Source of the DNA: Octopus sinensis
Lineage: Eukaryota
NCBI RefSeq assembly: GCF_006345805.1
Contig: NW_021833008.1
Location: 1 to 64,000 of the forward strand
Direction of reading: 5' to 3'
DNA: 64,000 nt
Shown: one piece after another, positions 11,766-62,862 of the stretch
How positions within the stretch are numbered: position 1 is the first letter of the stretch
Layout: the number at the start of each line of letters is the position of its first letter
The notes under the pieces: model-generated
Databases searched by the model: none
What the model saw: the letters and a program-made list of their open reading frames with translations, nothing else
Told to the model about the DNA's origin: nothing
Program-made: the position numbers and the translations under genes

Positions 11766-11836
11766 ACCAGTTTAGCTTAATGGTAAAGCACTTGACTGGA
11801 AATCAAAGGGATGTGAGCTTGATTCCCATGGCTGGT
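11766..11836 (+). pseudogene. tRNA-like cloverleaf (degenerate tRNA or SINE head), anticodon loop reads GGA
   Basis: Acceptor accagtt/ggctggt; D stem gctt/aagc with tggt loop; anticodon stem ttga/tcaa with loop ctggaaa; T arm gtgag-cttgatt-cccat is degenerate. Confidence 0.55.
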
Positions 11837-12049
11837 TGCTGACAGATTTTTCTACTCTGTAAGGCTTTTATTCTATATATGCTGTACAGTCAGTATTTAC
11901 ATGTCGAAAAAAAATATCTTTCTACTTGTACTACAATACATTTCAGCAATTCAAAAACAAACTTGTTATATATTGCTGCCAATAATATTTTAATGTTTAT
12001 AATTTTCCTCATTATATTATTCCAGTGTTATTGAAATAGCAATATTACA

Positions 12050-22300: not shown

Positions 22301-24203
22301 TCAATCTAGCTAAAACCAAAGTCGTAATCAGTTGGAAGGTAGACAAATCACAAACGCCTTCAGGTAGATGGCCCTGCTCGATCTGTAGAAAAGGTGTAGG
22401 TAGAAACTCTATAAGATGCACCAAGTGTAAGCTATGGACACATAAGAGGTGCAGCAATGTCAAAGGAAGGCTAACTAGGAAGATGGTTTTTGTATGTGGC
22501 AGATGCTCAGGAACAATAAACACTGAAAATGCTCTGAGACCAACTTCCGTCACTTTCCAGGGAGAAAACTAGAAATAGTTGATAGCTTCCGTTACCTAGG
22601 TGACCAAGTCAGCAGCGGGGGCGGGTGTGCTGAAAGTGTAACTGCTAGAGTAAGAATAGCTTGGGCAAAGTTCAGAGAGCTCTTACCTCTGCTGGTGACA
22701 AAAGGCCTCTCGCACAGAGTGAAAGGCAGACTGTATGATGCGTGTGTACGAACAGCCATGCTACATGGAAGTGAAACATGGGCTATGACTGCTGAGGATA
22801 TGCGTAAGCTTGCAAGAAATGAGCCAGTATGCTCCGATGGATGTGTAATGTCAGTACTCATACTCGGCAGAGTGTAAGTTCCTTGAGAGAAAAGCTGGAC
22901 CTAAGAAGCATCAGTTGTGGTGTGCAAGAGAGACGTTTGTGCTGGTATGGTCATGTGGCGAGAATGGATGAAGATAGTTGTGTGAAAAAGTGCCACACCC
23001 TAGCTGTTGAGGGAACCTGCGGAAGAGGCAGACCCAGGAAAACCTGTGACAAGGTGGTGAAACACGACCTTCGAACTTTAGGTCTCACTGAGGAAATGAC
23101 TAGAGACCGAGACCTCTGGAAGTGTGCTGTGCATGAGAAGACCCGGCAGGACAAGTGAGTCCATAACCTGTGGCCTTCTACATGGGATGGAGCCAGCCTA
23201 CGTATGCATACCTTCCCTTCTTGGGACACAAAACTCTACTTGTGAAGACCTGTTGAGGCAAGTAAGGATCAGAATCGAAATCGATCAATGGAAATTGCAG
23301 ATGTGTTACCAGTGCCGGTGGCATGTCGAAACTCTACTTGTGAAGACCCGTTGAGGCAAGTGAGGATCAGAATCAAAATCGATCAATGGAAATTGCAGAT
23401 GTGTTACCAGTGCCGGTGGCATGTAAGAGAACCTTCCATTTCGCGACCGTTGCCAGCACCGCCCCGACTGGCCTCGTGCCGATGGCACGTAAAAAGCACC
23501 ATCCGTTCGTGTCCGTTGCCAGCCTCGCCTGGCCCTCGTGCCGGTGGCACATAAAAAGCACCATCCGTTCGTGGCCGTTTGCCAGCTCTGTCTGTGCGAG
23601 TGGCACGTAAAAAGCACCCACTACACTCACGGAGTGGTTGTCGTTAGGAAGGGCATCCAGCCGTAGAAACACTGCCAGATTTGACTGGGCCTGATGAAGC
23701 CTTCTGGCTTCACAGACCCCAGTAGAACCGTCCAACCCATGCTAGCATGGAAAACGGACGCTAAACGATGATGATGATGATGATGAATTGTATTATAAAC
23801 ACTTGGTCATACATTTTAAGTTTAAAATTTAGTTAATGGAATTTCTTTTATAAGAAGAATCATGTTTTATTTCTTTAAGAAATATTGTTTAATTCTGTTT
23901 GATTATTTATTAAAAATATGTATTTATTGTTATTATTGTTGACTTGAGGAGTGACTATACTTTTAAATTGAATTGTTTTTGGATTGATTAAATCTAAATT
24001 TAAATTTAATTGTAATTCAAATTGAAGATATAGCCACGAAACATACGTAGTCTTTTTACTAATTATATATTGTTTGATTATTTATTATTATATAATTTAT
24101 TATGATCTAGGTAAGTGTTTTATCATATATTTTATTTTTTCTATATAGTATGATTTACATCTATCATTGTTTGAATTATATAATAATTGTTTTTCTCTAA
24201 TTT
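19320..24203. mobile_element. AT-rich foldback-like unit with ~210-bp inverted ends, containing an RTE insertion
   Basis: 19320-19531 is an imperfect reverse complement of ~23993-24203; both outer ends lie in (TA)n; internal direct subrepeats near 19545 and 19915. Confidence 0.6.
20478..23785 (+). mobile_element. RTE LINE, young, 5'-truncated in the AP endonuclease
   Basis: GDFNGHVG and QIDYIL (APE, 20523-20987); RT ORF 21520-22572 with [10 protein letters not shown] and LYADDL; (GAT)n tail at 23767-23785. Confidence 0.96.
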
Positions 24204-41170: not shown

Positions 41171-41469
41171 CTACTTACACACATACACACACACACACAT
41201 TCTCTTGTTTTATATGTATACATATTTCTTATTTGATGTATTTAATATATTTGATGTGTCCAATTTGTTTATCCCCATAATTGATTCTATACCTGCTTAA
41301 CCGGATCCCTCTTATAGCCTTTCTTTACATTGTGAAATGATCCCCTGTAAAGACATCAGAGTCTAAGTCTGAATCTTTTGAGCACTGTTAAGTGTTTTCT
41401 CTATGGAGAATATCTGGATCTCATCTGTGAACTATATAAATACACACACACACACATATATATATATAT

Positions 41470-43903
41470 ATGAGGAAACCAGGCTACTGGAGTTCTGTGA
41501 TGCATGTAAACTTTTAATCTGCAACGCTCACTTCAGGAAGCCAGACAACCACCTTATAACCTATCAATGAGGGGACTCTGCTAGCCAGATTGATTTCATC
41601 CTCACTAGACAACGGGACGCAGGGTTGCTCTTAAATACAAAGATCCTCCCAGGTGAAGAATGTACACCCCAGCATAGGCTAATCATTAGTGACTTTATGC
41701 TCAAGGCCAGAAGGATACCAAGAAGTAGACCAATCCAAAAAAGAAGGATTTGGAAGCTAAAGAACCCTTCACATGGTCAGAGATTTAGAGACATCCTCAT
41801 CAAGAAAGTTGAGGAGAGGGAGGAGGAGCTACAAACATCGGACATAGAAGGTAGCTGGAAATTCCTACAGGACAGCTTGCTGAGTGCTACAGACCAAGTG
41901 TGTGATTGGTGCAAGTCCATCTCATCAGAGGGTCATAGTCTATCTCATCAGAGAGAGAGTCTGCTTAGATGAGTTGCAGTTCAGTTTTGTGCTGGGTAGA
42001 AGCACCACTGATGCTATATTCCTGGTTCGACAACTGCAGGAGAAATACCTAGCTAAAGATAAACCCCTATACTTAGCTTTTGTGGACTTGGAGAAAGCCT
42101 TTGACAGGGTGCCCCAATCCCTTATCTGGTGGGCGATGCGGAAACTGGAGATTGACGAATGGTTAATAAGGGCTGTATTAGGATTGTCAATGAGTATAGT
42201 GAAGAATTCTGGGTAAAAGTAGGGGTCCACCAAGGTTCAGCCCTCAGTCCCCTTTTAATCATCATAGTCCTTCAGGCAATAACAGAGGAATTCAAGACGG
42301 GTTGCCCCTGGGAGCTCCTCTATGCTGATGACCTGGCCCTCACAACAGAATCACTACCGGAACTAGAAAAGAAATTTTGTGTGTAGAAGCTAAGTTTGGA
42401 AACAAAAGGCCTTAGAATCAATGCAGCAAAGACCAAAGTTCTAGTAAGTAGGAAGGCGAACACATCATACACCGCCTCAGGTGGCCCTGCTTGATCTGTA
42501 GAAAAGGTGTAGGTAGAAACTCCATAAGATGTACCCAATGTAAGCTATGGACACATAAGAGGTGCAACAACATCAAAGGAAAATTTATCGAGAAGATAGC
42601 TTTCGTGTGCAGCAGATGCACAGGCCAATAGACCCCACAGATACTTAGAAAACAGATTTGATCACACTCCAGGAGGAGAAACTAGAAGTAGTTGATAGTT
42701 TTCTGCTACCTAGGTGACCAAGTTAGTTGTGGGGGTGGATGCTCAGAGAGTATTACCACTAGAATAAGAATAGCCTGGCCAAAGTTTAGAAATCTTCTTC
42801 CCCTACTGGCGACAGAGGGTCTCTCGCTCAGAGTGAAAGGTAGATTATACGACGCATGTATGGGAACTGCAATGCTACATGGCAGTGAAACGTGGGCCGT
42901 GACTGCGGAGGATATGCGTAGGCTCGAAAGAAATGAAGCTACCATGATCCACTGGATGTGTAATGTCAGTGTGCATGCACGACAGTGTAAGTGCCCTGAG
43001 AGAAATGTTGAACATAAGAAGCATCGGATGTGGCATGCAGGAGAAGCATTTCTGTTGGTATGGTCATGTACTACAGATGGGTGCGGAGAGATGTGTGAGG
43101 AAGTGCCACCCCCAAACTGTTGAAGGAATCCAGGGTAGAGGTAGACCCAGGAAGACACGGGATGAGGTGGTCAAGCATGACCTTCGAACGTTGGGCCTCA
43201 CAGAGGCCATGACAATAGACCGAGACCTCTGGAGATATGCTGTGACTGAGAAGACCCGACAAATGAAGTGAGTTCATGGCTCACAGGATGGCCTGCTGTG
43301 CTTGAGGAGACCTATTGAGTCAAATACATCAACATCAAAATAAAAAATCAAATGGATATTGTAGTTGTGATACCCATGGCGGTGGCATGTTGGGCCTCAC
43401 AGAGGCAATGACGAAAGACCGCGACCCCTGAGATATGCTGTGACTGCGAAAACCCAACAAATAAAGGTAGTTTATGGTTCGCAGGATGGCCTACTATGCT
43501 TACCTTGTGCTTGAGGAGACCTATTGAGTTAAGTACATCTACATCAAAATAAAAATCAATGGAAATTGTAGAAGTGATACCTGTACTAGTAGCATGTAAA
43601 AAGCACCATCCGAACGTGGCCGATGCCAGCGCCGCCTTGACTGGCGTCCGTGCTGGTGACACGTAAAAAGCACCAACCAATCATGGCAGTCTACCGTCCT
43701 CCCCTGGTCTCTATGCCAGTGGCATGTAAAAAGCACCCACTACACTCACTGAGTGGTTGGCGTTAGGAAGAGCATCCAGCTGTAGAAACACTGCCAGATG
43801 AGACTGGAGCCAGATGCAGCCTCCTGGCTTCCCAGACCCCAGTTGAACCCTCCGACCCATGCTAGCATGGAAATTGGATGTTAAACGATGATGATGATGT
43901 ATG
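41470..43903 (+). mobile_element. RTE LINE with a large internal deletion and chimeric/duplicated 3' end
   Basis: APE (QIDFIL, PGEECTPQHRL) jumps at ~41925 to RT (ERVI...LIRER); ORF end duplicated at 43191 and 43390; (GAT)n tail at 43887-43899. Confidence 0.9.
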
Positions 43904-44399
43904 TATATCCATGTAACTCCTCTGCAACAAGACATGGCATATCCATGTAATTCCTACAACAGTAATACACCTATATCTGTCCCCTCTGTACTTTAAATCT
44001 CACAACTGCTACAAAGCTACACTCTCCCAGTTGGTAGGGTATTTTGTGTTGCAAGGTACTTGTTGACCCTGTTAATGCTGTTGCCATGTAAAAAGCACTG
44101 GTGCTGGTGCCACATAAAATCACCAATACAATCTGTAAAGTGGTTGGCATCAGAAAAGCCATCAAGCTGCAGAAACCATACCAAAACAGACAGTGAACAT
44201 TGTTGTGGCTTCTAGCTTTGTCAGTTCCTGTCAAACTTTCCAACATATGCCAGCATGGAAAACAGATGTTATTATGATGATGATGATGATGATATACTTA
44301 GATGTACATAAATATAAACATACACCACAGTAATTATCTTCTCTTTCTCTTATAAGCAAGGTTTTGTGTCATTCTGGATTGACTTCCCAGCAACATTGC

Positions 44400-46259: not shown

Positions 46260-46550
46260 AATCATCATCATCATCATCATCATCATCGTTTAACGTCCAT
46301 TTTCTGTGCTAGCACGGGTTGGACAGTTTGACTGGGGTCTGGAAAGCCAGGAGGCTGCACCAGGCTCCAGTCTGATCTGGCAGTGTTTCTACAGGTGGAT
46401 GACCTTCCTAACGCCAACCACTCTGTGAGTGTAGTGGGTGCTTTTTTCGTGCCGCCGGCACTGGTTCCAGGGGGGCTCGCAGCGGCAACGATCGGTTGGT
46501 GCCAGTCAAGGTGGCGCTGCAATCGGCCACGTTCGGATGGTGCTTTTTAT
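46260..46550 (-). mobile_element. Solo RTE 3' UTR fragment
   Basis: (CAT)n-cgtttaacgtcc...ttctacaggtggatgaccttcctaacgccaaccactc, matching the 3' end of the RTE family. Confidence 0.85.
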
Positions 46551-46559
46551 GTGCTGAAA

Positions 46560-46920
46560 GGAAGCAACAGAAAGTAACAACCACACTCTTACCCGCGCGT
46601 AGACCGGGTCACCTTCAGCTAGTCTATATATATAAAACTGAGAATGTATGTCTGTCTGTCTGTGTGAATCACTAAAACTTGAGAACTACACGACCAATTT
46701 CATTCAATTTTATACATGCGTTACTTGGGGTCCATGTAGTGTCATGGGCAAAAAAAAGTTTTTAAGTTCATGCCTAGGGCGAGCCCACAGCAATATCATA
46801 TCTTCTCCACTATTTCAGTATTACGTGTTAAAAGTGAAACAAAAACATCTCTATTGTAATGTCAGATGCTTTCAGTTTAATATTGAAACTATTAAAGTGA
46901 AACTATTATATAACTTGACA
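46560..46920 (+). mobile_element. Helitron 3' terminus fused directly to a Helitron 5' terminus (CTAG|TC)
   Basis: Hairpin acccg...cgggt (46591-46609), CTAG at 46619-46622, then TCTATATATATAAAACTGAG from 46623. Confidence 0.75.
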
Positions 46921-47898
46921 GAGTGTACTTTGAGAGAAAAGTTGGACCTAAGAAGCATCAGTTGTGGTGTGCAAGAGAGAGGTTTGCGCTGGTATGGTCA
47001 TGTGATGAGAATGGATGAAGGTAGTTGTGTGAAAAAGTGCCACACCCTAGCAGTTGAGGGAACCTGTGGAAGAGGTAGACCCAGGAAAACCTGGGACGAG
47101 GTGGTGAAGCACGACCTTTGAACTTTAGGTCTCACCGAGGAAATGACTAGAGACCGAGACCATTGGAATTATGCTGTGCGTGAAAAGACCCGGCAGGATA
47201 AGTGAGGCCATAATCCCGTGGCCTCTACCTAGGATGTAGCCAGCCCACTTATGCGTTCCTTTCCTTCTTGGGACACAAAACTCCACTTGTGAAGACCTGT
47301 TGAGGCAAGTGAAAATCAAAATTGTAATCTATCAACATCAGTGGAATTTGTAGCTGTGATACCAGTGCCGGTGGCACGTAAGAGAACAATCGGAACGTGG
47401 CTGTAGCCAGTGCCGCCCTGAATGGCTTCCGTGCCAGTGGCATGTAAAAAGCACCATCTGATCGTGGCTGTTTGCCAGCCTCGTCTGGCACCTGTACCGG
47501 TGGCTTGTAAAAAGCACCCACTACACTCACGGAGTGGTTGGCGTTAGGAAGGGCATCCAGCTGTAGAAACACTGCCAGATGAGACTGGAGCCAGATGCAG
47601 CCTCCTGGCTTCCCAGACCCCAGTTGAACCCTCCGACCCACGCTAGCATGGAAATTGGATGTTAAACGATGATGATGATGTATGGCAGTCTACCGTCCTC
47701 CCCTGGTCTCTATGCCAGTGGCATGAAAAAAGCACCCACTACACTCACTGAGTGGTTGGCGTTAGGAAGGGCATCCAGCTGTAGAAACACTGCCAGATCA
47801 GACTGGGCCTGGTGCAGCCTTCTGGCTTCCCAGACCCCAGTTGAACCGTCCAACCCATGCTAACATGGAAAGCGGACGTTAAACGATGATGATGATGA
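46920..47898 (+). mobile_element. RTE 3' fragment with a doubled 3' terminus
   Basis: TLREKLDLRSISCGVQERGLRWYGHV...[13 protein letters not shown]; two (GAT)n tails at ~47668 and ~47885. Confidence 0.92.
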
Positions 47899-48030
47899 CG
47901 AACCATTAAGAGTGGACATCTATTTTGCTAGAAGATCCGCTATGGTCTTATATGCTACACCGCTGGTTTTCAATTCATATTAATCAAATTAATATTCAAT
48001 TTTTCACCCTTATTATTTTAAATTCAAATT

Positions 48031-48064
<34 letters not shown>

Positions 48065-48142
48065 GATGTATACATATAGATGTATATATATAGATGTATA
48101 TATATAGATGTGTATATATAGATGTGTATGTATATGGCTGTA

Positions 48143-48186
<44 letters not shown>

Positions 48187-48187
48187 A

Positions 48188-50161
48188 GTGTATCAGACTG
48201 CCAGAAGGGAAGCTAGGAGACAGGTCTATCTAGCCAGAGGGGAAGCAGATAAAAGAAAATTTGCCAATGTCCTGCGCCGTGAGGATGAAAGACTTGAGGT
48301 ATTTCGTGTTGCAAGACAGTGTGTGAGAGAGAATCGAGATGTGGTAGGAGAGAAATGTGTTCGCATGGAGGATGGTTCACTTGCGCTAAATGAGGATGCA
48401 AAGAGAGAAGCTTGGAGACGCCACTATGAAAGGTTGCTGAATGAGGAAAATGAATGGGATAAAGAGAGTCTGCCGAATGTTGACCCAACAGAGGGACCAG
48501 CTATCCGAGTTGATAGTTCCGTGGTAGCTAAGGCAATTAGAAGCATGAAGACAGGGAAAGCCCCAGGCCCATCAGGAATTACTGCAGAGATGCTCAAAAT
48601 ATCTGGTAGTGTCGGCTATAGCATAGTCACCCGTATAGTTAACCAGGTGATACACGAAGGAGTCATACCCAATGACTGGTGTAGCAGCATAATAGTCAAC
48701 TGCTACAAAGGTAAAGGCGACGCCCTAGATACAAATAACTACAGGGGCATCAAGCTGTTGGATCAGGTAATGAAGGTTACGGAGAGGGTTATAGCCCAGT
48801 TAATTAGAGAGAGAGTTAGCTTAGATGATATGCAGTTTGGGTTCGTGCCAGGGAAAAGTACTACTGATGCTATATTCCTGGTAAGACAGCTGCAGGAGAA
48901 ATACCTAGCCAAAGGTAAGCCCTTGTACCTGGCTTTTGTTGACTTAGAGAAAGCCTTTGACAGGGTCCCCCGATCCCTTATCTGGTGGTCAATGAGGAAA
49001 CTAGGGATAGATGAATGGTTAGTGAGAGCTGTGCGAGCCATGTACAGAGACACAGCTAGTAAGGTGAGGGTTGGCAACGAGTACAGTGAAGAATTCCGGG
49101 TAGAGGTTGGGGTCCACCAAGGTTCAGTCCTCAGCCCCCTCCTATTTATCATAGTCCTCCAGGCAATAATGGAAGAATTTAAGACAGGATGCCCCTGGGA
49201 GCTCCTATATGCTGATGACCTTGCTCTAATTGCTGAGTCACTATCAGAACTGGAGGAGAAATTTCAGGTGTGGAAACAAGGATTAGAATCGAAGGGCCTT
49301 AGAATCAACCTAGCCAAAACCAAAGTCCTAATAAGTAGGAAGGTGGACCAACCACAAACGACTTCAGGTAGATGGCCCTGCTCGATCTGTAAAAAAGGTG
49401 TAGGTAGAAACTCTATAAGGTGCACCAAATGTAAGCTATGGACACATAAGAGGTGCAGCAATGTCAAAGTAAGGCTAACTAAGAAAATAGTTTTTGTCTG
49501 TGGCAGATGCTCAGGAGAAATAAACACTGGAAATGTGCAGAGACCAACTTCTACCACGTTCCAGGGAGACAAACTAGAAGTAGTTGATAGCTTCCGCTAC
49601 CTAGGAGACCAAGTCAGTAGCGGGGGTGGGTGTGCTGAAAGTGTAACTGCTAGAGTAAGAATAGCCTGGGCAAAGTTTAGAGAGCTCTTACCCCTGCTGG
49701 TGACAAAAGGCCTCTCGCTAAGAGTAAAAGGCAGACTATATGATGCGTGTGTACGTACAGCTATGCTACATGGTAGTGAAACATGGGCCGTGACAGCTGA
49801 GGATATGCGTAAGCTTGCAAGAAATGAAGCCAGTATGCTCCGATGGATGTGTAATGTCAGCGTTCATAATCGTCAGAGTGTAAGTACTTTGAGAGAAAAG
49901 TTGAACCTAAGAAGTGTCAGTTGTGGTGTGCAAGAGAGACGGCTGCGCTGGTATGGTCATGTGACGAGAATGGCTGAAGATAGTTGTGTGCAAAAGTGCT
50001 ACACCCTAGCAGTTGAGGGAACCTGTGGAAGAGGTAGACCCAGGAAAACCTGGGACGAGGTGGTGAAGCACGACCTTCGAACTTTAGGTCTCACCAAGGA
50101 AATGACTGAAGACCGAGTCCTATGGAAGTGTGCTGTGCATGAGAGGACCCGGCAGGACTAG
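48188..50161 (+). CDS. RTE ORF (5'-truncated): uninterrupted 657-codon RT region with an inserted PHD-like finger
   Basis: No stops or frameshifts; [39 protein letters not shown]; CSIC...CTKC...HKRC...CGRC. Confidence 0.95.
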
Positions 50162-52560
50162 TCAGGCCATATCCCGTGGCCCCTACCTGGGACGTAGTCG
50201 ATCCACCTGTGCATACCTTCCTTCTTGTGACACTTGTGAAGACCTGCTGAGGCAAGTGAAAATCAATCAAAATAGATGAACATCAATGGAATTTGTATCT
50301 TTGTGGTACCAGTGCCTGTGGCACACAAGAAAACCATCCGAACGTGGCCGTAGCCAGTACCGCATCGACTGGCCTCCGTGCTGTGGGAACATGGTGGCAC
50401 ATAAAAACACCATCCGAAGACCCGGCAAGACTAGTCAGGTCATAACCCGTGGGCCCTACCTGGGACGTAGTCAGTCCACCTGTACATACCTTCCTTCTTG
50501 TGACACTTGTGAAGACCTGCTGAGGCAAGTGAAAATCAAATCAAATCAAAACAAATCAAAATAGATGAACATCAATGGAATTTGTATCCTTGTGGTACCA
50601 GCGCCGGTGGCACACAAGAATCCATCCGAACGTGGCCGTAGTCAGTACCACTTGTGGTACCAGTGCCGTGGCACACAAGAATCCATCCGAACGTGGCCGT
50701 AGTCAGTACCGCATCACTCGCCATCGTGCTGTGGGCACATAACAAACACCATCCGGTCGTGGCCGTTCACCAGCCTCATCTAGCACCTGTGTCGGTGGCA
50801 CATAAAAAGTAGTCAGTACCGCTTGTGGTACCAGTGCCGGTGGCACACAAGAATCCATCCGAACATGGCCGTAGTCAGTACCGCATCACTGGCCATCATG
50901 CTGTGGGCACATAACAAACACCATCCGGTCGTGGCCGTTCGCCAGCCTCATCTAGCACCTGTGTCGGTGGCACATAAAAACACCTTCCGAAGACCCGGCA
51001 AGACTAGTCAGGCCATAAACCATGGTCCCTACCTGGGACGTAGTCAGTCCACCTGTGCATACCTTCCTCCTTGTGATACTTGTGAAGGCCTGTTGAGGCA
51101 AGTGAAAATCAAAATCAAATCAAAATCAAAACAAATCAAAATAGATGAACATCAATGGAATTTGTATCTTTGTGGTACCAGTGCCGGTGGCACACAAGAG
51201 AAGACCATCCGAAAGTGGCCGTAGCCAGTACCGCATCGACTGGCCTCCGTGCTGTGGGCACATGACAAACACCATCCGATCGTGGCCGTTCGCCAGCCTC
51301 ATCTAGCACCTGTGTCGGTGGCACATAAAAACACCATCCGAAGACCCGGCAAGACTAGTCAGGCCATAACCCATGGCCCCTACCTGGGACGTAGTCAGTC
51401 CACCTGTGCATACCTTCCTTCTTGTGACACTTGTGAAGACCTGTTGAGGCAAGTGAAAATCAAATCAAAACAAATCAAAATAGATGAACATCAATGGAAT
51501 CTGTATCTTTGTGGTACCAGTGCCGGTGGCACACACTTTGTGGTACCAGTGCCGGTGGCACACAAGAGAACCATCCGAACGTAGCCAGTTCCACATCGAC
51601 CGGCCTCCGTGCTGTGGGCACGTAACAAACACCATCCGATCATGGCCGTTCGCCAGCCTCATCTAGCACCTGTGTCGGTGGCACATAAAAACACCTTCCG
51701 AAGACCCGGCAAGACTAGTCAGTCCACCTGTGCATATCTTCCTTCTTTTGACACTTGTGAAGACCGGTTGAGGCAAGTGAAAATCAAATCAAATCAAAAT
51801 AGACAAAATAGATGAACATCAATGGAATTTGTATCTTGTGGTACCAGTGCCTGTGGCACACAAGAAATCCATCAGTGCCGTAGTCAGTGCGGTGGGCACA
51901 TGACAAACACCATCCGATCGTGGCCGTTCGCCAGCCTCATCTAGCACCTGTGTCGGTGGCACATAAAAACACCATCCGAAGACCCGGCAAGACTAGTCAG
52001 GCCATAACCCATGGCCCCTACCTGGGACGTAGTCAGTCCACCTGTGCATACCTTCCTTCTTGTGACACTTGTGAAGACCTGTTGAGGCAAGTGAAAATCA
52101 AATCAAAACAAATCAAAATAGATGAACATCAATGGAATTTGTATCTTTGTGGTACCAGTGCCGGTGGCACGTGGCACATAAGAAAACCATCCGAACGTGG
52201 CCGTAGCCAGTACCGCCCGCATCGACTGGCCTCCATGCTGTGGGCACGTAACAAGCACCATCCGATCGAGGCCGTTTGCCAGCCTCATCTGGCACCTGTG
52301 TCGGTGGCACATAAAAAACACCATCCGAGCGTGGCCGTCTGCCAGCCTCGTCTGGCACCTGTGTCGGTGGCACATAAAAACACCATCCGAGCGTGGCCGT
52401 CTGCCAGCCTCGTCTGGCACCTGTGTCGGTGGCACATAAAAAACACCATCCGAGCGTGGCTGTCTGCCAGCCTCGTCTGGCACCTGTGTCGGTGGCACAT
52501 AAAAACACCATCCGAGCGTGGCCGTTTGCCAGCCTCGTCTGGCACCTGTGTCGGTGGCAT
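50147..52560 (+). repeat. Tandem array derived from the RTE 3' UTR (six ~270-570 bp units plus five 62-63 bp units)
   Basis: gacccggca(a/g)gactagtcag recurs at ~50146, 50419, 50993, 51343, 51704 and 51981; ccatccga(g/t)cg units at 52258, 52321, 52383, 52446 and 52508. Confidence 0.92.
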
Positions 52561-52770
52561 AAAATCACCCACTACACTCTCGGAGTGGTTGGCGTTAGGA
52601 AGGGCATCCAGCTGTAGAAACACTGCCAGATCTGACTGGACTGGTGCAGCTTTCGGGCTCCCCAGACCCCAGTTGAACCGTCCAACCCATGCTAGCATGG
52701 AAAGCGGACGTTAAATGATGATGATGATGATGATGATATATATATATATACATGTATATATATATATATT

Positions 52771-52810
<40 letters not shown>

Positions 52811-52811
<1 letters not shown>

Positions 52812-53782
52812 CTCTCTCTATATAAACGGCAGTTTGTCTGTGCGTGTTTCTGTGTGTCTGTTTTCTCGTACCCTCACCCTGACCACGGCTTTCAACCGAT
52901 TCTGATGAAACTTGACACACACATAGCCCAATGTCATAATTCAAAACTAACGCAGCGAAAATTTTGAAAAGTTCCCCCAGTTCTGAAAAAAATCGATAAA
53001 TTCGACATGGGGTCGAGAATAAAAAAAAACAACCACAGACTGTCTAGGGGACGCAACTCAACCTTTTATTACTCTCAAAAAAAAAATTTACCATCATTTT
53101 TTTTCCATTTTTTGCTATTTTTTGGCTATAACTCTCTAAAAATGCTTTATAGTTATTTCCCTTACAAACCTGAGCAACGCCGGGCGATACTGCTAGTATA
53201 TATATATAGATGTGTATTTATACATGTATATGTATTGCTGTATATGTATACATCTATATGTATAGCTGTATATGTATAGATGTATTTCTATAGATATAGA
53301 TGTACATGTAATATATACACATATATACATGCATACATATACACACACACACACAGAGGCACACATACATAGGTGCAGGTGTGGCTGTGTGGTAACAAAC
53401 TTGGTTCCAAAACACATGGTCCTCAGTCTCAGTCCCACTGTGTGGTTACTTAGCATGTGTCTTCTGCTATAGCCTCAGACCAACCAAAGCCTTGTCAGTG
53501 GATTTTGTAGACAGAAACTGAATAAATCAATTGTATATATATATATGTATGTATATATGTAAGTCTATGTGTGTGTCTTTGTGTTTCTCCCTCATCACTG
53601 CTTCACAACTGGTGTTCGTTTATTTATATCCCCATAACTTACTGGTTTCTTAAGAAGAAACTGATAGAATAAGTACCAGGCTTATCAAAATAAAAAAAAA
53701 GCACAAGGCAGTGTCTCTTATTTTTGTTTGGCCACTCAGTTGTATCTATCAATTTATCTTTTGTGTGTGTGTGTATATACAT

Positions 53783-62653: not shown

Positions 62654-62862
62654 AACTTTGAATAATTCTATTAATGAGTGTAACATTAAATCTATATATA
62701 AATTTATTATATAAGTTTAACTAATTTCATCATCAACATCATTATCGTTTAACATCCGTTTTAAACGATGATGATGATGATGATGATGAAATTAGTTAAA
62801 CTTATATAATAAATTTATATATAGATTTAATGTTACACTCATTAATAGAATTATTCAAAGTT
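62654..62862. repeat. Near-perfect 209-bp palindrome
   Basis: Outer 82 nt of each arm are exactly reverse-complementary; centre is (cat)n-cgtttaa catccgtt ttaaacg-(atg)n. Confidence 0.95.

What the first reader, a model, noticed from the sequence alone, without database searches (positions are those of the whole stretch)
47521..47898. 218-bp circularly permuted copy of the 43.7-43.9 kb LINE end inserted into another LINE 3' UTR
At 43686-43903 the order is A (gcagtctaccgtcctcccctgg...cactgagtgg) then B (gagactggagccagatg...aaattggatgttaaacg(atg)n-tatg). At 47.58-47.77 kb the same private variants appear as B then A, joined by an ATG microhomology (43683-43685 and 43901-43903). The repeat period there (47521 to 47739) is exactly 218 bp, the length of the donor segment. 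The copy includes non-element flank (tatg) and differs at about 3 sites. This fits a small DNA circle formed from the donor and integrated 3.8 kb away by single crossover in the shared UTR core. A double template switch with slippage would look the same.
Basis: partly seen in the sequence, partly recalled or inferred. Interest (0 to 1): 0.72.

Follow-up and report, generated by a model that had tools for sequence, protein, structure and literature searches.

The report
Permuted neighbour-copied insert in LINE tail
A 218-bp piece of one decayed LINE retrotransposon's 3' end was copied, tail first and front second, into the matching spot of another LINE 3.8 kb away; the rearrangement is real, of a known kind, has no evident function, and the sequence alone cannot show how it formed.

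Summary
Window 47467-47897 aligns end to end with the donor 43686-43903 written twice.

E2 is a 5'-truncated LINE 3' end (46913-47897). It reads: own A2, core, then donor-type B1, (GAT)4G, tatg | donor-type A1, core, then own B2 and tail.

- The donor-derived tract is at least 47581-47749 (167/169 identical) and at most 47532-47798.
- The junction tatg|gcag (47684|47685, ATG microhomology) is unique in the window.
- Only 1 of about 11 element tails in the window is followed by element sequence.

The source is the E1 locus itself, not a master RNA. The tract carries E1's private variants and E1's probable 4-bp target-site duplicate (tatg).

The circle reading is only partly supported. The "exactly 218 bp" period is forced by one tail-to-A junction plus in-register homology, so it is not independent evidence.

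My best reading (about 0.45) is homology-guided copying during repair or replication: E2 to E1, a 218-bp backward slip at ATG, then back to E2. It is favoured by cis proximity in a family with about 11 tails per 64 kb.

Rivals are a small circle, a lost tandem-duplication allele plus conversion, reverse-transcriptase switching, and misassembly. The host genome could not be reached.

It is a new example of a known kind, of low to moderate interest.

The parts
41473..43899 (+). E1: old, 5'-truncated, frame-broken LINE (endonuclease-end, RT and C-terminal remnants, about 630-bp 3' UTR, (GAT)4G tail). This is the donor element.
   Evidence: ORF fragments and nucleotide similarity to the intact-ORF copy at 48188-50161 and to L001. 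Private-site density 60/341 = 17.6%.
41469..41472 (+). tatg immediately upstream of E1; candidate left copy of a 4-bp target-site duplication in a (CA)n(TA)n tract.
   Evidence: Sequence read directly.
43683..43685 (+). ATG just before the donor segment; left microhomology.
43686..43903 (+). 218-bp donor segment: A1 (last VNTR-like unit), conserved core, B1, (GAT)4G tail, and tatg flank (43900-43903, which holds the right ATG microhomology 43901-43903).
46913..47897 (+). E2: 5'-truncated LINE 3' end of a younger subfamily; the acceptor, including the 218-bp insert.
   Evidence: Closest copies are 22862-23326 (87.5%), 16997-16390 (86.3%) and 49884-50381 (85%), against 76% to E1. Private-site density 10/370 = 2.7%.
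47581..47749 (+). Minimal E1-derived tract (B1, tail, tatg, A1, left core); 167/169 identical to the permuted donor.
47532..47798 (+). Maximal E1-derived tract. Both switch points lie in the shared core, between markers 47531/47581 and 47749/47799.
47682..47684 (+). ATG at the novel junction (tatg|gcag, 47684|47685). It joins E1's 3' flank to the start of A1.
   Evidence: (unique in the window).
47641..47641 (+). Tract-specific substitution (c; E1 and all other copies have t).
47726..47726 (+). Tract-specific substitution (a; E1 and most other copies have t).
47799..47897 (+). E2's own B2 and (GAT)4G tail; near the family consensus.

Best explanation
This is a templated insertion made by homology-guided copying from the neighbouring LINE copy during DNA repair or replication.

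Proposed path (inferred):
1. A 3' end in E2's conserved 3'-UTR core, from a break or a stalled fork, paired with the homeologous core of E1 3.8 kb upstream in the same orientation.
2. It copied B1, the (GAT)n tail and 4 nt of E1's flank.
3. It came off, re-primed 218 bp back on E1 at a 3-nt ATG microhomology, and copied A1 and the core again.
4. It returned to E2 in register within the core.

The net result is a 218-bp gain in E2 that looks like a circular permutation of E1's end, with E1 unchanged.

Shown by the data: the E1-locus origin, the direction, the junction, the in-register switch intervals, and the intact donor.

Inferred: the enzyme (DNA polymerase rather than reverse transcriptase), and that the junction formed on the nascent strand rather than on a circle or an earlier tandem-duplication allele.

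No function is implied. It is a neutral scar in a repeat.
For: 1. The tract carries E1's private states and its probable target-site duplicate tatg. So the template was the E1 locus, not a family master.
2. Direction. A1 is contiguous with E1's own upstream 3' UTR, which belongs to the older subfamily also seen at 46261-46560. The rest of E2 belongs to another subfamily.
3. Both outer switch points fall in the longest identical stretch between E1 and E2 (20-49 bp blocks). The inner junction has 3-nt microhomology. This is the usual signature of template switching.
4. Cis proximity. The window holds 9 cores and about 11 tails of this family in 64 kb. Yet the donor is the nearest well-matched same-orientation copy.
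5. Local precedent. The neighbouring copy's 3' UTR (50161-52737) holds a 171-bp tandem duplication at 96.5% identity and a 287-bp block at 99% between otherwise 75-87% similar units. Exchanges and duplications of 170-290 bp therefore recur in these 3' UTRs.
6. Experimental precedent. Yeast break repair makes jumps into and back out of a 72%-identical template, copying a few hundred bases. It also makes microhomology-bounded tandem duplications, and it leaves the donor unaltered (PMC12891019).
Against: - In the yeast data the backward slips that give tandem duplications lie within about 40 bp behind the polymerase. Template jumps there need about 200 bp of adjacent homeology. Here the backward jump is 218 bp, with only 3 nt of microhomology and no adjacent homeology that I could see.
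- After copying B1 and the tail, the nascent strand could simply have annealed to E2's B2, giving a plain conversion.
- Nothing in the sequence excludes a pre-formed junction, whether a circle or a tandem-duplication allele.
- The proximity argument extrapolates family density from one window.
Confidence: 0.45

Rival explanations
1. Small circle. A 218-bp extrachromosomal circle formed from E1's end by joining at the ATG microhomology, without loss of E1. It then either integrated into E2 by one crossover in the shared core, or served as a go-round template for repair of a break in E2.
For: - A perfect circular permutation with a single novel junction and 3-nt microhomology.
- The size is in the range of nucleosome-sized germline eccDNAs (about 180 and 360 bp), which mostly have microhomology under 5 bp (PMC10581685).
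- Permuted duplicates in the human genome have been attributed to eccDNA reinsertion, with smaller undetected cases predicted, and there are cattle and yeast precedents (PMC7188851).
- With a circle as template, no polymerase back-jump is needed.
Against: - A freely diffusing 218-bp circle has no reason to choose the copy 3.8 kb from its origin among what is probably a very large family.
- A crossover would have to occur within at most about 49 bp of perfect identity on a very stiff circle.
- Germline small eccDNAs appear to come largely from dying cells.
- The published reinsertion cases are cut-and-inserted without homology, not in register.
- The marker pattern and the 218-bp period do not discriminate between the models.
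Confidence: 0.2
2. Two steps. E1 (on this or the homologous chromosome) once carried an ordinary 218-bp tandem duplication made by slippage at the ATG repeats. A short ectopic gene conversion of about 170-260 bp then copied the duplication junction into E2. The duplicated E1 allele was later lost, or is simply not the assembled haplotype.
For: - Tandem duplications and short, nearly identical conversion-like blocks of similar size are visible in the neighbouring copy's 3' UTR.
- Each step is a common kind of mutation.
- It predicts the same product.
Against: - It needs three events: duplication, conversion, and loss or non-sampling.
- E1 in the window shows no trace of a duplication.
Confidence: 0.12
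3. Reverse-transcriptase switching at the birth of E2. During target-primed reverse transcription of E2's RNA, the LINE enzyme switched in the conserved core onto an RNA containing E1 with its flank (a read-through or host pre-mRNA). It jumped from the ATG before A1 to the ATG after the tail, then switched back.
For: - LINE reverse transcriptases make double template jumps that yield tripartite chimeras (PMC2104539).
- The jump lands on the (ATG)n-like tail where this enzyme normally initiates.
- Timing is compatible. There are 2 tract-specific changes in about 200 bp, against E2's private density of 2.7%. With about 5.4 changes expected in 200 bp, Poisson P(2 or fewer) is about 0.1, computed by hand from the counts.
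Against: - The template must be a transcript of the old E1 locus including its flank, not an active master.
- Donor proximity is unexplained unless a nascent local transcript was used.
- It needs three switches, two of them homology-guided and in register.
- A circular-RNA template is unlikely. None of the four possible junction placements has AG...GT on either strand, read directly.
Confidence: 0.1
4. Either it is an ordinary structure of a subfamily (many copies with a tail-to-A junction, for example a 218-bp satellite monomer derived from the LINE end), or it is an assembly or amplification chimera.
For: - These 3' UTRs are repeat-rich and duplication-prone.
- No reads or other genome copies could be examined.
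Against: - In the window, 1 of about 11 tails is followed by element sequence, and the A1 and B1 strings occur exactly only at E1 and E2.
- A distant relative has the canonical order.
- The tract carries two substitutions of its own and clean in-register switch points. That is not what a collapse or chimeric read typically gives.
Confidence: 0.08

Closest known systems
eccDNA-mediated (circularly permuted) duplication: Takahashi & Innan 2020 (PMC7188851), which also cites cattle and yeast reintegration precedents (among them the cattle colour-sidedness case; my identification of it, from memory)
   Same: The copy is a circular permutation of a contiguous donor with one novel end-to-start junction. 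The donor is retained. The mechanism is inferred from sequence pattern only.
   Different: - Those cases are 20-130 kb (the detection floor was 500 bp); this one is 218 bp.
- Those inserts are cut anywhere and placed without homology. This one is in register inside a homologous repeat, 3.8 kb from the donor, so polymerase template switching explains it equally well.
Template switching during homologous break repair: interchromosomal template switches and microhomology-bounded tandem duplications in yeast (PMC12891019); MMBIR/FoSTeS templated insertions (PMC8421209)
   Same: - Jumps into and back from a diverged homologous template.
- A few hundred bases copied.
- Junctions at short perfect matches within longer homeology.
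- The donor is unaltered.
- The template is nearby.
   Different: It needs an extra 218-bp backward re-priming at only 3 nt. That is longer than the roughly 40-bp window seen for tandem duplications in yeast. It is seen here as a fixed or assembled germline variant in an animal repeat, not a selected reporter event.
LINE reverse-transcriptase template jumping (bi- and tripartite chimeric retrocopies, PMC2104539)
   Same: A multi-part chimera within a LINE 3' end, with a junction at an element's 3' terminus.
   Different: The parts are homologous and in register. The foreign part comes from a decayed neighbouring locus together with its flank, rather than from abundant cellular RNAs.
Tandem-repeat growth in retrotransposon 3' UTRs (as in the neighbouring copy at 50161-52737)
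   Same: A gain of a unit of a few hundred bp inside the VNTR-like 3' UTR of the same family.
   Different: Here the added unit is not a copy of the acceptor's own sequence. It comes from another copy.

Membership tests
Circle-mediated (eccDNA) permuted duplication | The copy is a circular permutation of one contiguous donor segment, with a single novel end-to-start junction. | tested here: met
   Continuous alignment to the doubled donor. Junction at 47684|47685.
Circle-mediated (eccDNA) permuted duplication | A circular molecule with that junction exists or existed. | not testable with these tools
   There are no circle-sequencing data or reads. Metagenome scans found nothing.
Circle-mediated (eccDNA) permuted duplication | The pattern cannot be produced by a simpler or local copying route (the argument used in PMC7188851). 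| tested here: not met
   Donor and acceptor are homologous, in the same orientation and 3.8 kb apart. In-register template switching gives the identical product, and the 218-bp period is forced.
Templated insertion by polymerase template switching (SDSA/BIR/MMBIR/FoSTeS type) | The inserted sequence is templated from a nearby locus that remains unchanged. | tested here: met
   E1 is intact at 43686-43903. The tract is 167/169 identical to it. The distance is 3781 bp.
Templated insertion by polymerase template switching (SDSA/BIR/MMBIR/FoSTeS type) | Homology or microhomology at every switch point. | tested here: met
   The two outer switches fall within 20-49 bp identical core blocks. The inner junction has ATG, 3 nt.
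Templated insertion by polymerase template switching (SDSA/BIR/MMBIR/FoSTeS type) | Excess point mutations in the newly copied tract (error-prone synthesis). | tested here: inconclusive
   There are two tract-specific substitutions in 169-218 bp. They cannot be told apart from ordinary later decay.
Non-LTR (LINE) retrotransposon 3' end with microsatellite tail | Reverse-transcriptase ORF upstream. Apurinic-type endonuclease in full-length relatives. | tested here: met
   RVT_1 E = 5e-33 in the 657-aa ORF of the neighbouring copy. Relatives carry PF03372 plus PF00078, with or without a PHD domain. E1 and E2 carry remnants of the same ORF end.
Non-LTR (LINE) retrotransposon 3' end with microsatellite tail | Canonical order: VNTR-like units, conserved core, B, (GAT)n, then flank. 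| tested here: met
   Seen in nine window copies and in the distant relative L001. Only E2 departs from it.
   Within the window it is 1 of about 11 tails, and the junction 20-mer is unique. The genome-wide test was not possible.
Reverse-transcribed circular RNA or chimeric retrocopy | Canonical back-splice signals (AG...GT) at the junction, or an insert that is the same age as the host element. | tested here: inconclusive
   There is no AG...GT at any of the four junction placements on either strand (read). Timing of the tract against E2 is not resolved.

The most novel reading that the evidence does not exclude
A nucleosome-sized (218-bp) extrachromosomal circle, budded from the end of a dead LINE next to its microsatellite tail, was written back into the germline by homology with a neighbouring LINE. 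This could have happened by crossover or as a go-round repair template. It would be a sub-500-bp case of eccDNA-mediated duplication, below the detection floor of published surveys. It would also suggest that microDNAs can seed tandem-repeat growth in retrotransposon 3' UTRs.
Probability: 0.18. Interest if true: 0.55.

Novelty: new member of a known kind. Interest (0 to 1): 0.27.

Why it matters
By itself it matters little. It is one neutral rearrangement inside repeats, with no coding or regulatory consequence visible.

Its value is as a clean, datable specimen. The donor, the acceptor, all three switch intervals and the donor's flank can all be read. That shows dense, homeologous LINE 3' ends acting as substrates for complex local copying. 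It also shows how the VNTR-like 3' UTRs of this family can gain units from other copies.

A genome-wide census could turn a one-off anecdote into a test. If many such in-register permuted inserts exist, the donor-acceptor distance distribution would separate circle reinsertion from template switching.

Tried and rejected
- **Scans for independent copies or other individuals.** I scanned the public metagenome contigs for the A1 string and for the family core. The genome collection on hand is prokaryotic only.
- **Protein search with the neighbouring 657-aa ORF.** The best full-length identity was 56%, and one partial hit reached 74%. The host species is evidently not in the protein or contig collections. 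I therefore did not spend a search on the junction-spanning 64-aa ORF (47669-47863).
- **Full-text search for the core sequence in papers.** It gave 0 hits. The organism was not identified. Rfam gave only one tRNA.
- **Secondary structure.** I checked whether structure brings the two ATG sites together. The RNA fold of 43683-43903 is no better than shuffles (z = -0.10).
- **Circular-RNA origin.** There are no canonical splice signals at the junction.
- **Two independent head-to-tail retrotranspositions.** Rejected. Both halves would have to be reciprocal chimeras that share an old copy's private changes and its flank.
- **Transfer from E2 to E1.** Rejected on subfamily contiguity.
- **Dating the transfer against E2's insertion.** Underpowered: 2 changes per roughly 200 bp against 2.7%.
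- **Using site 2 (both E2 copies G, E1 A) to discriminate the models.** It does not. A later E1 mutation, mismatch repair, or staggered switch points all fit.

Full report
**What is there**

The window is repeat-rich eukaryotic DNA, about 31-51% G+C per 2-kb block. It is dense in one non-LTR retrotransposon family.
- The copy at 48188-50161 has an open 657-aa ORF with a reverse-transcriptase domain (RVT_1, E = 5e-33) and a weak, sub-threshold match to a PHD-type zinc finger.
- Full-length relatives in public data add an apurinic-type endonuclease.
- The canonical 3' UTR runs as follows: several 45-60-bp units of the form ggtggcacgtaaaaagcacc...; a strongly conserved core (cactacactc.cggagtggttggcgttaggaagggcatccagctgtagaaac); a roughly 100-bp 'B' segment; and a (GAT)n tail.
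- Nine window copies show this order. So does a distant relative on a metagenome contig (L001, 74% amino-acid identity).

**Check of the observation**

The quoted strings are present at the stated coordinates.
- Aligning 47450-47950 to the 218-bp donor (43686-43903) written twice gives one continuous alignment, 47467-47897 against positions 1-432.
- Column by column, E2 reads:
  - its own last unit A2 and left core (marker 47531 g; 47552 g);
  - then E1-type B1, from 47581 on;
  - then the tail (GAT)4G and tatg;
  - then, at 47685, E1-type A1 and left core (marker 47749 t);
  - then E2's own B2, from 47799 at the latest, and its tail to 47897.
- The E1-derived tract is at least 47581-47749 (167/169 identical) and at most 47532-47798.
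- All 13 columns in 43683-43903 where E1's state is absent from six independent copies reappear in E2, in the predicted half.
- In the window the A1 and B1 strings occur exactly only at E1 and E2. The sole looser match is a 3-mismatch B1 match in the inverted copy at 46347-46377.
- The junction 20-mer occurs once.
- Of about 11 family tails in the window, only the one at 47668-47680 is followed by element sequence.

**Direction and source**

- E1 (41473-43899) is an old, frame-broken copy, with private-site density 17.6%.
- Its A1 unit is contiguous with its own upstream 3' UTR. It shares subfamily traits (caccaacc......cccctgg, ggagcc, cctcc) with the inverted copy at 46261-46560.
- E2 (46913-47897) belongs to a younger subfamily. 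It is 85-87.5% identical to the copies at 22.9, 17.0 and 49.9 kb, against 76% to E1, and its private-site density is 2.7%.
- So A1 and B1 are native to E1 and foreign in E2.
- E1 is bracketed by tatg at 41469-41472 and at 43900-43903, inside (CA)n(TA)n-like sequence.
- Several other copies also sit in TA-rich microsatellite. So tatg is most simply E1's 4-bp target-site duplicate.
- Because the tract in E2 carries that tatg, and carries E1's changes at 99% identity, the template was the E1 locus, or a very recent duplicate of it. It was not a master RNA, and it was not an independent insertion. (The only other member of E1's subfamily in the window is 86-87% identical to E1.)

**What the 218 does and does not show**

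Given one junction that joins E1 position 43903 to 43686, and given that both outer boundaries lie in register in homologous sequence, the net gain must be 218 bp. This holds whatever the mechanism, so the exact period adds nothing.

The marker pattern does not help either.
- A single crossover with a circle predicts one E1 allele and one E2 allele at every marker. Site 2 shows G in both E2 copies, while E1 has A.
- This is explained equally by a later G-to-A change in E1, by mismatch repair, or by staggered switch points.

**Mechanism**

Four routes give the identical product:
- (a) Nascent-strand template switching during repair or replication: E2 to E1, a backward re-priming at ATG, then back to E2.
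- (b) A 218-bp circle from E1, used by crossover or as a go-round repair template.
- (c) An earlier tandem duplication at E1, followed by a short ectopic conversion.
- (d) Reverse-transcriptase switching onto an E1-containing transcript when E2 was made.

I favour (a), at about 0.45, for three reasons.
- **Proximity.** The family is so dense (9 cores and about 11 tails in 64 kb) that a diffusible intermediate would rarely land on the nearest good-homology neighbour. Cis proximity is what a homology search from a broken end favours.
- **Local precedent.** The 2.5-kb 3' UTR of the adjacent copy contains a 171-bp tandem duplication at 96.5%. It also contains a 287-bp block at 99% among units that are otherwise 75-87% alike. 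DNA-level exchanges of this size therefore recur here.
- **Experimental precedent.** Yeast break repair shows jumps into and out of a 72%-identical template over a few hundred bases, with the donor unchanged. It also shows microhomology-bounded tandem duplications (PMC12891019).

Against (a):
- Those duplications arise within about 40 bp behind the polymerase, and jumps need about 200 bp of homeology.
- Here the back-jump is 218 bp on 3 nt.

For (b):
- The size and microhomology match germline small eccDNAs (PMC10581685).
- Permuted duplicates have been ascribed to eccDNA reinsertion, with sub-500-bp cases predicted (PMC7188851).

Against (b):
- Those circles appear to derive largely from dying cells.
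- The published reinsertions are not homology-guided.
- Proximity is unexplained.

Route (d) remains possible.
- LINE enzymes make double jumps (PMC2104539).
- Timing is unresolved: 2 tract-specific changes in about 200 bp, against 2.7% for E2, give Poisson P of about 0.1.
- However, it needs a transcript of a dead neighbouring locus including its flank.
- A circular-RNA template lacks canonical splice signals at all four junction placements.

**Limits**

- The host genome, its reads and other individuals could not be examined.
- Two metagenome scans found nothing.
- The protein collections hold no close relative of this species.
- A literature search for the core sequence found nothing.

**Verdict**

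This is a real, neatly resolved templated insertion between neighbouring LINE 3' ends.
- It is a new example of known kinds of event: template-switch insertion or circle-mediated permuted duplication.
- The mechanism is not decidable from this sequence.
- No function is implied.
- Interest is low to moderate. It would rise only if a genome-wide census or an allele survey showed a circle route or a recurrent process.

Noticed in passing
window 48188-52737: The neighbouring LINE copy has an open 657-aa RT/PHD ORF and an unusually long (about 2.5 kb) 3' UTR. That UTR is built of 5-6 repeats of the ORF-end/3'-UTR-start segment (spacings 273-638 bp). It includes a 171-bp tandem duplication at 96.5% (50638-50808 / 50809-50980) and a 287-bp block at 99% (51246-51532 / 51884-52170) among units 75-87% alike. 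This indicates ongoing duplication or conversion inside the 3' UTR.
   Followed up: partly
window 48031-48186 and 52737-52827; 41421-41472 and 43900-43910; also 16100, 59843, L001 about 2030: Copies of this family tend to sit in (TA)n-type microsatellite. The tail (GAT)n is directly followed by atatat... in several copies, and one copy is flanked by (TA)n on both sides. This suggests a TA-repeat target preference.
   Followed up: partly
L001 1830-2050 versus window cores (e.g. 47521-47570): The roughly 45-nt 3'-UTR core (ctacactc.cggagtggttggcgttaggaagggcatccagctgtagaaa) is almost identical between the window and a relative whose ORF is only about 74% identical. The surrounding UTR has diverged. 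This looks like a selected 3' recognition element.
   Followed up: no
window 46261-46560 (- strand): An inverted copy of E1's older subfamily lies between E1 and E2. It forms 86-90% inverted repeats of 107-199 nt with both (I1-I3). No rearrangement involving it was seen.
   Followed up: no
window 44078-44293: A much more diverged, short member of the same 3'-end family (core aaagtggttggcatcagaaaagccatcaagctgcagaaacc, (GAT)6 tail) lies 180 bp downstream of E1. It was missed by the 3-mismatch core search.
   Followed up: no
window 11766-11837 (+): A tRNA match (Rfam RF00005, 49.9 bits). It could be a gene or the head of a tRNA-derived repeat.
   Followed up: no
window 62720-62790: An (atc)-like run plus cgtttaac (the reverse complement of the tail-proximal gttaaacg) is immediately followed by aaac(GAT)7. 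This may be two family tails facing each other.
   Followed up: no
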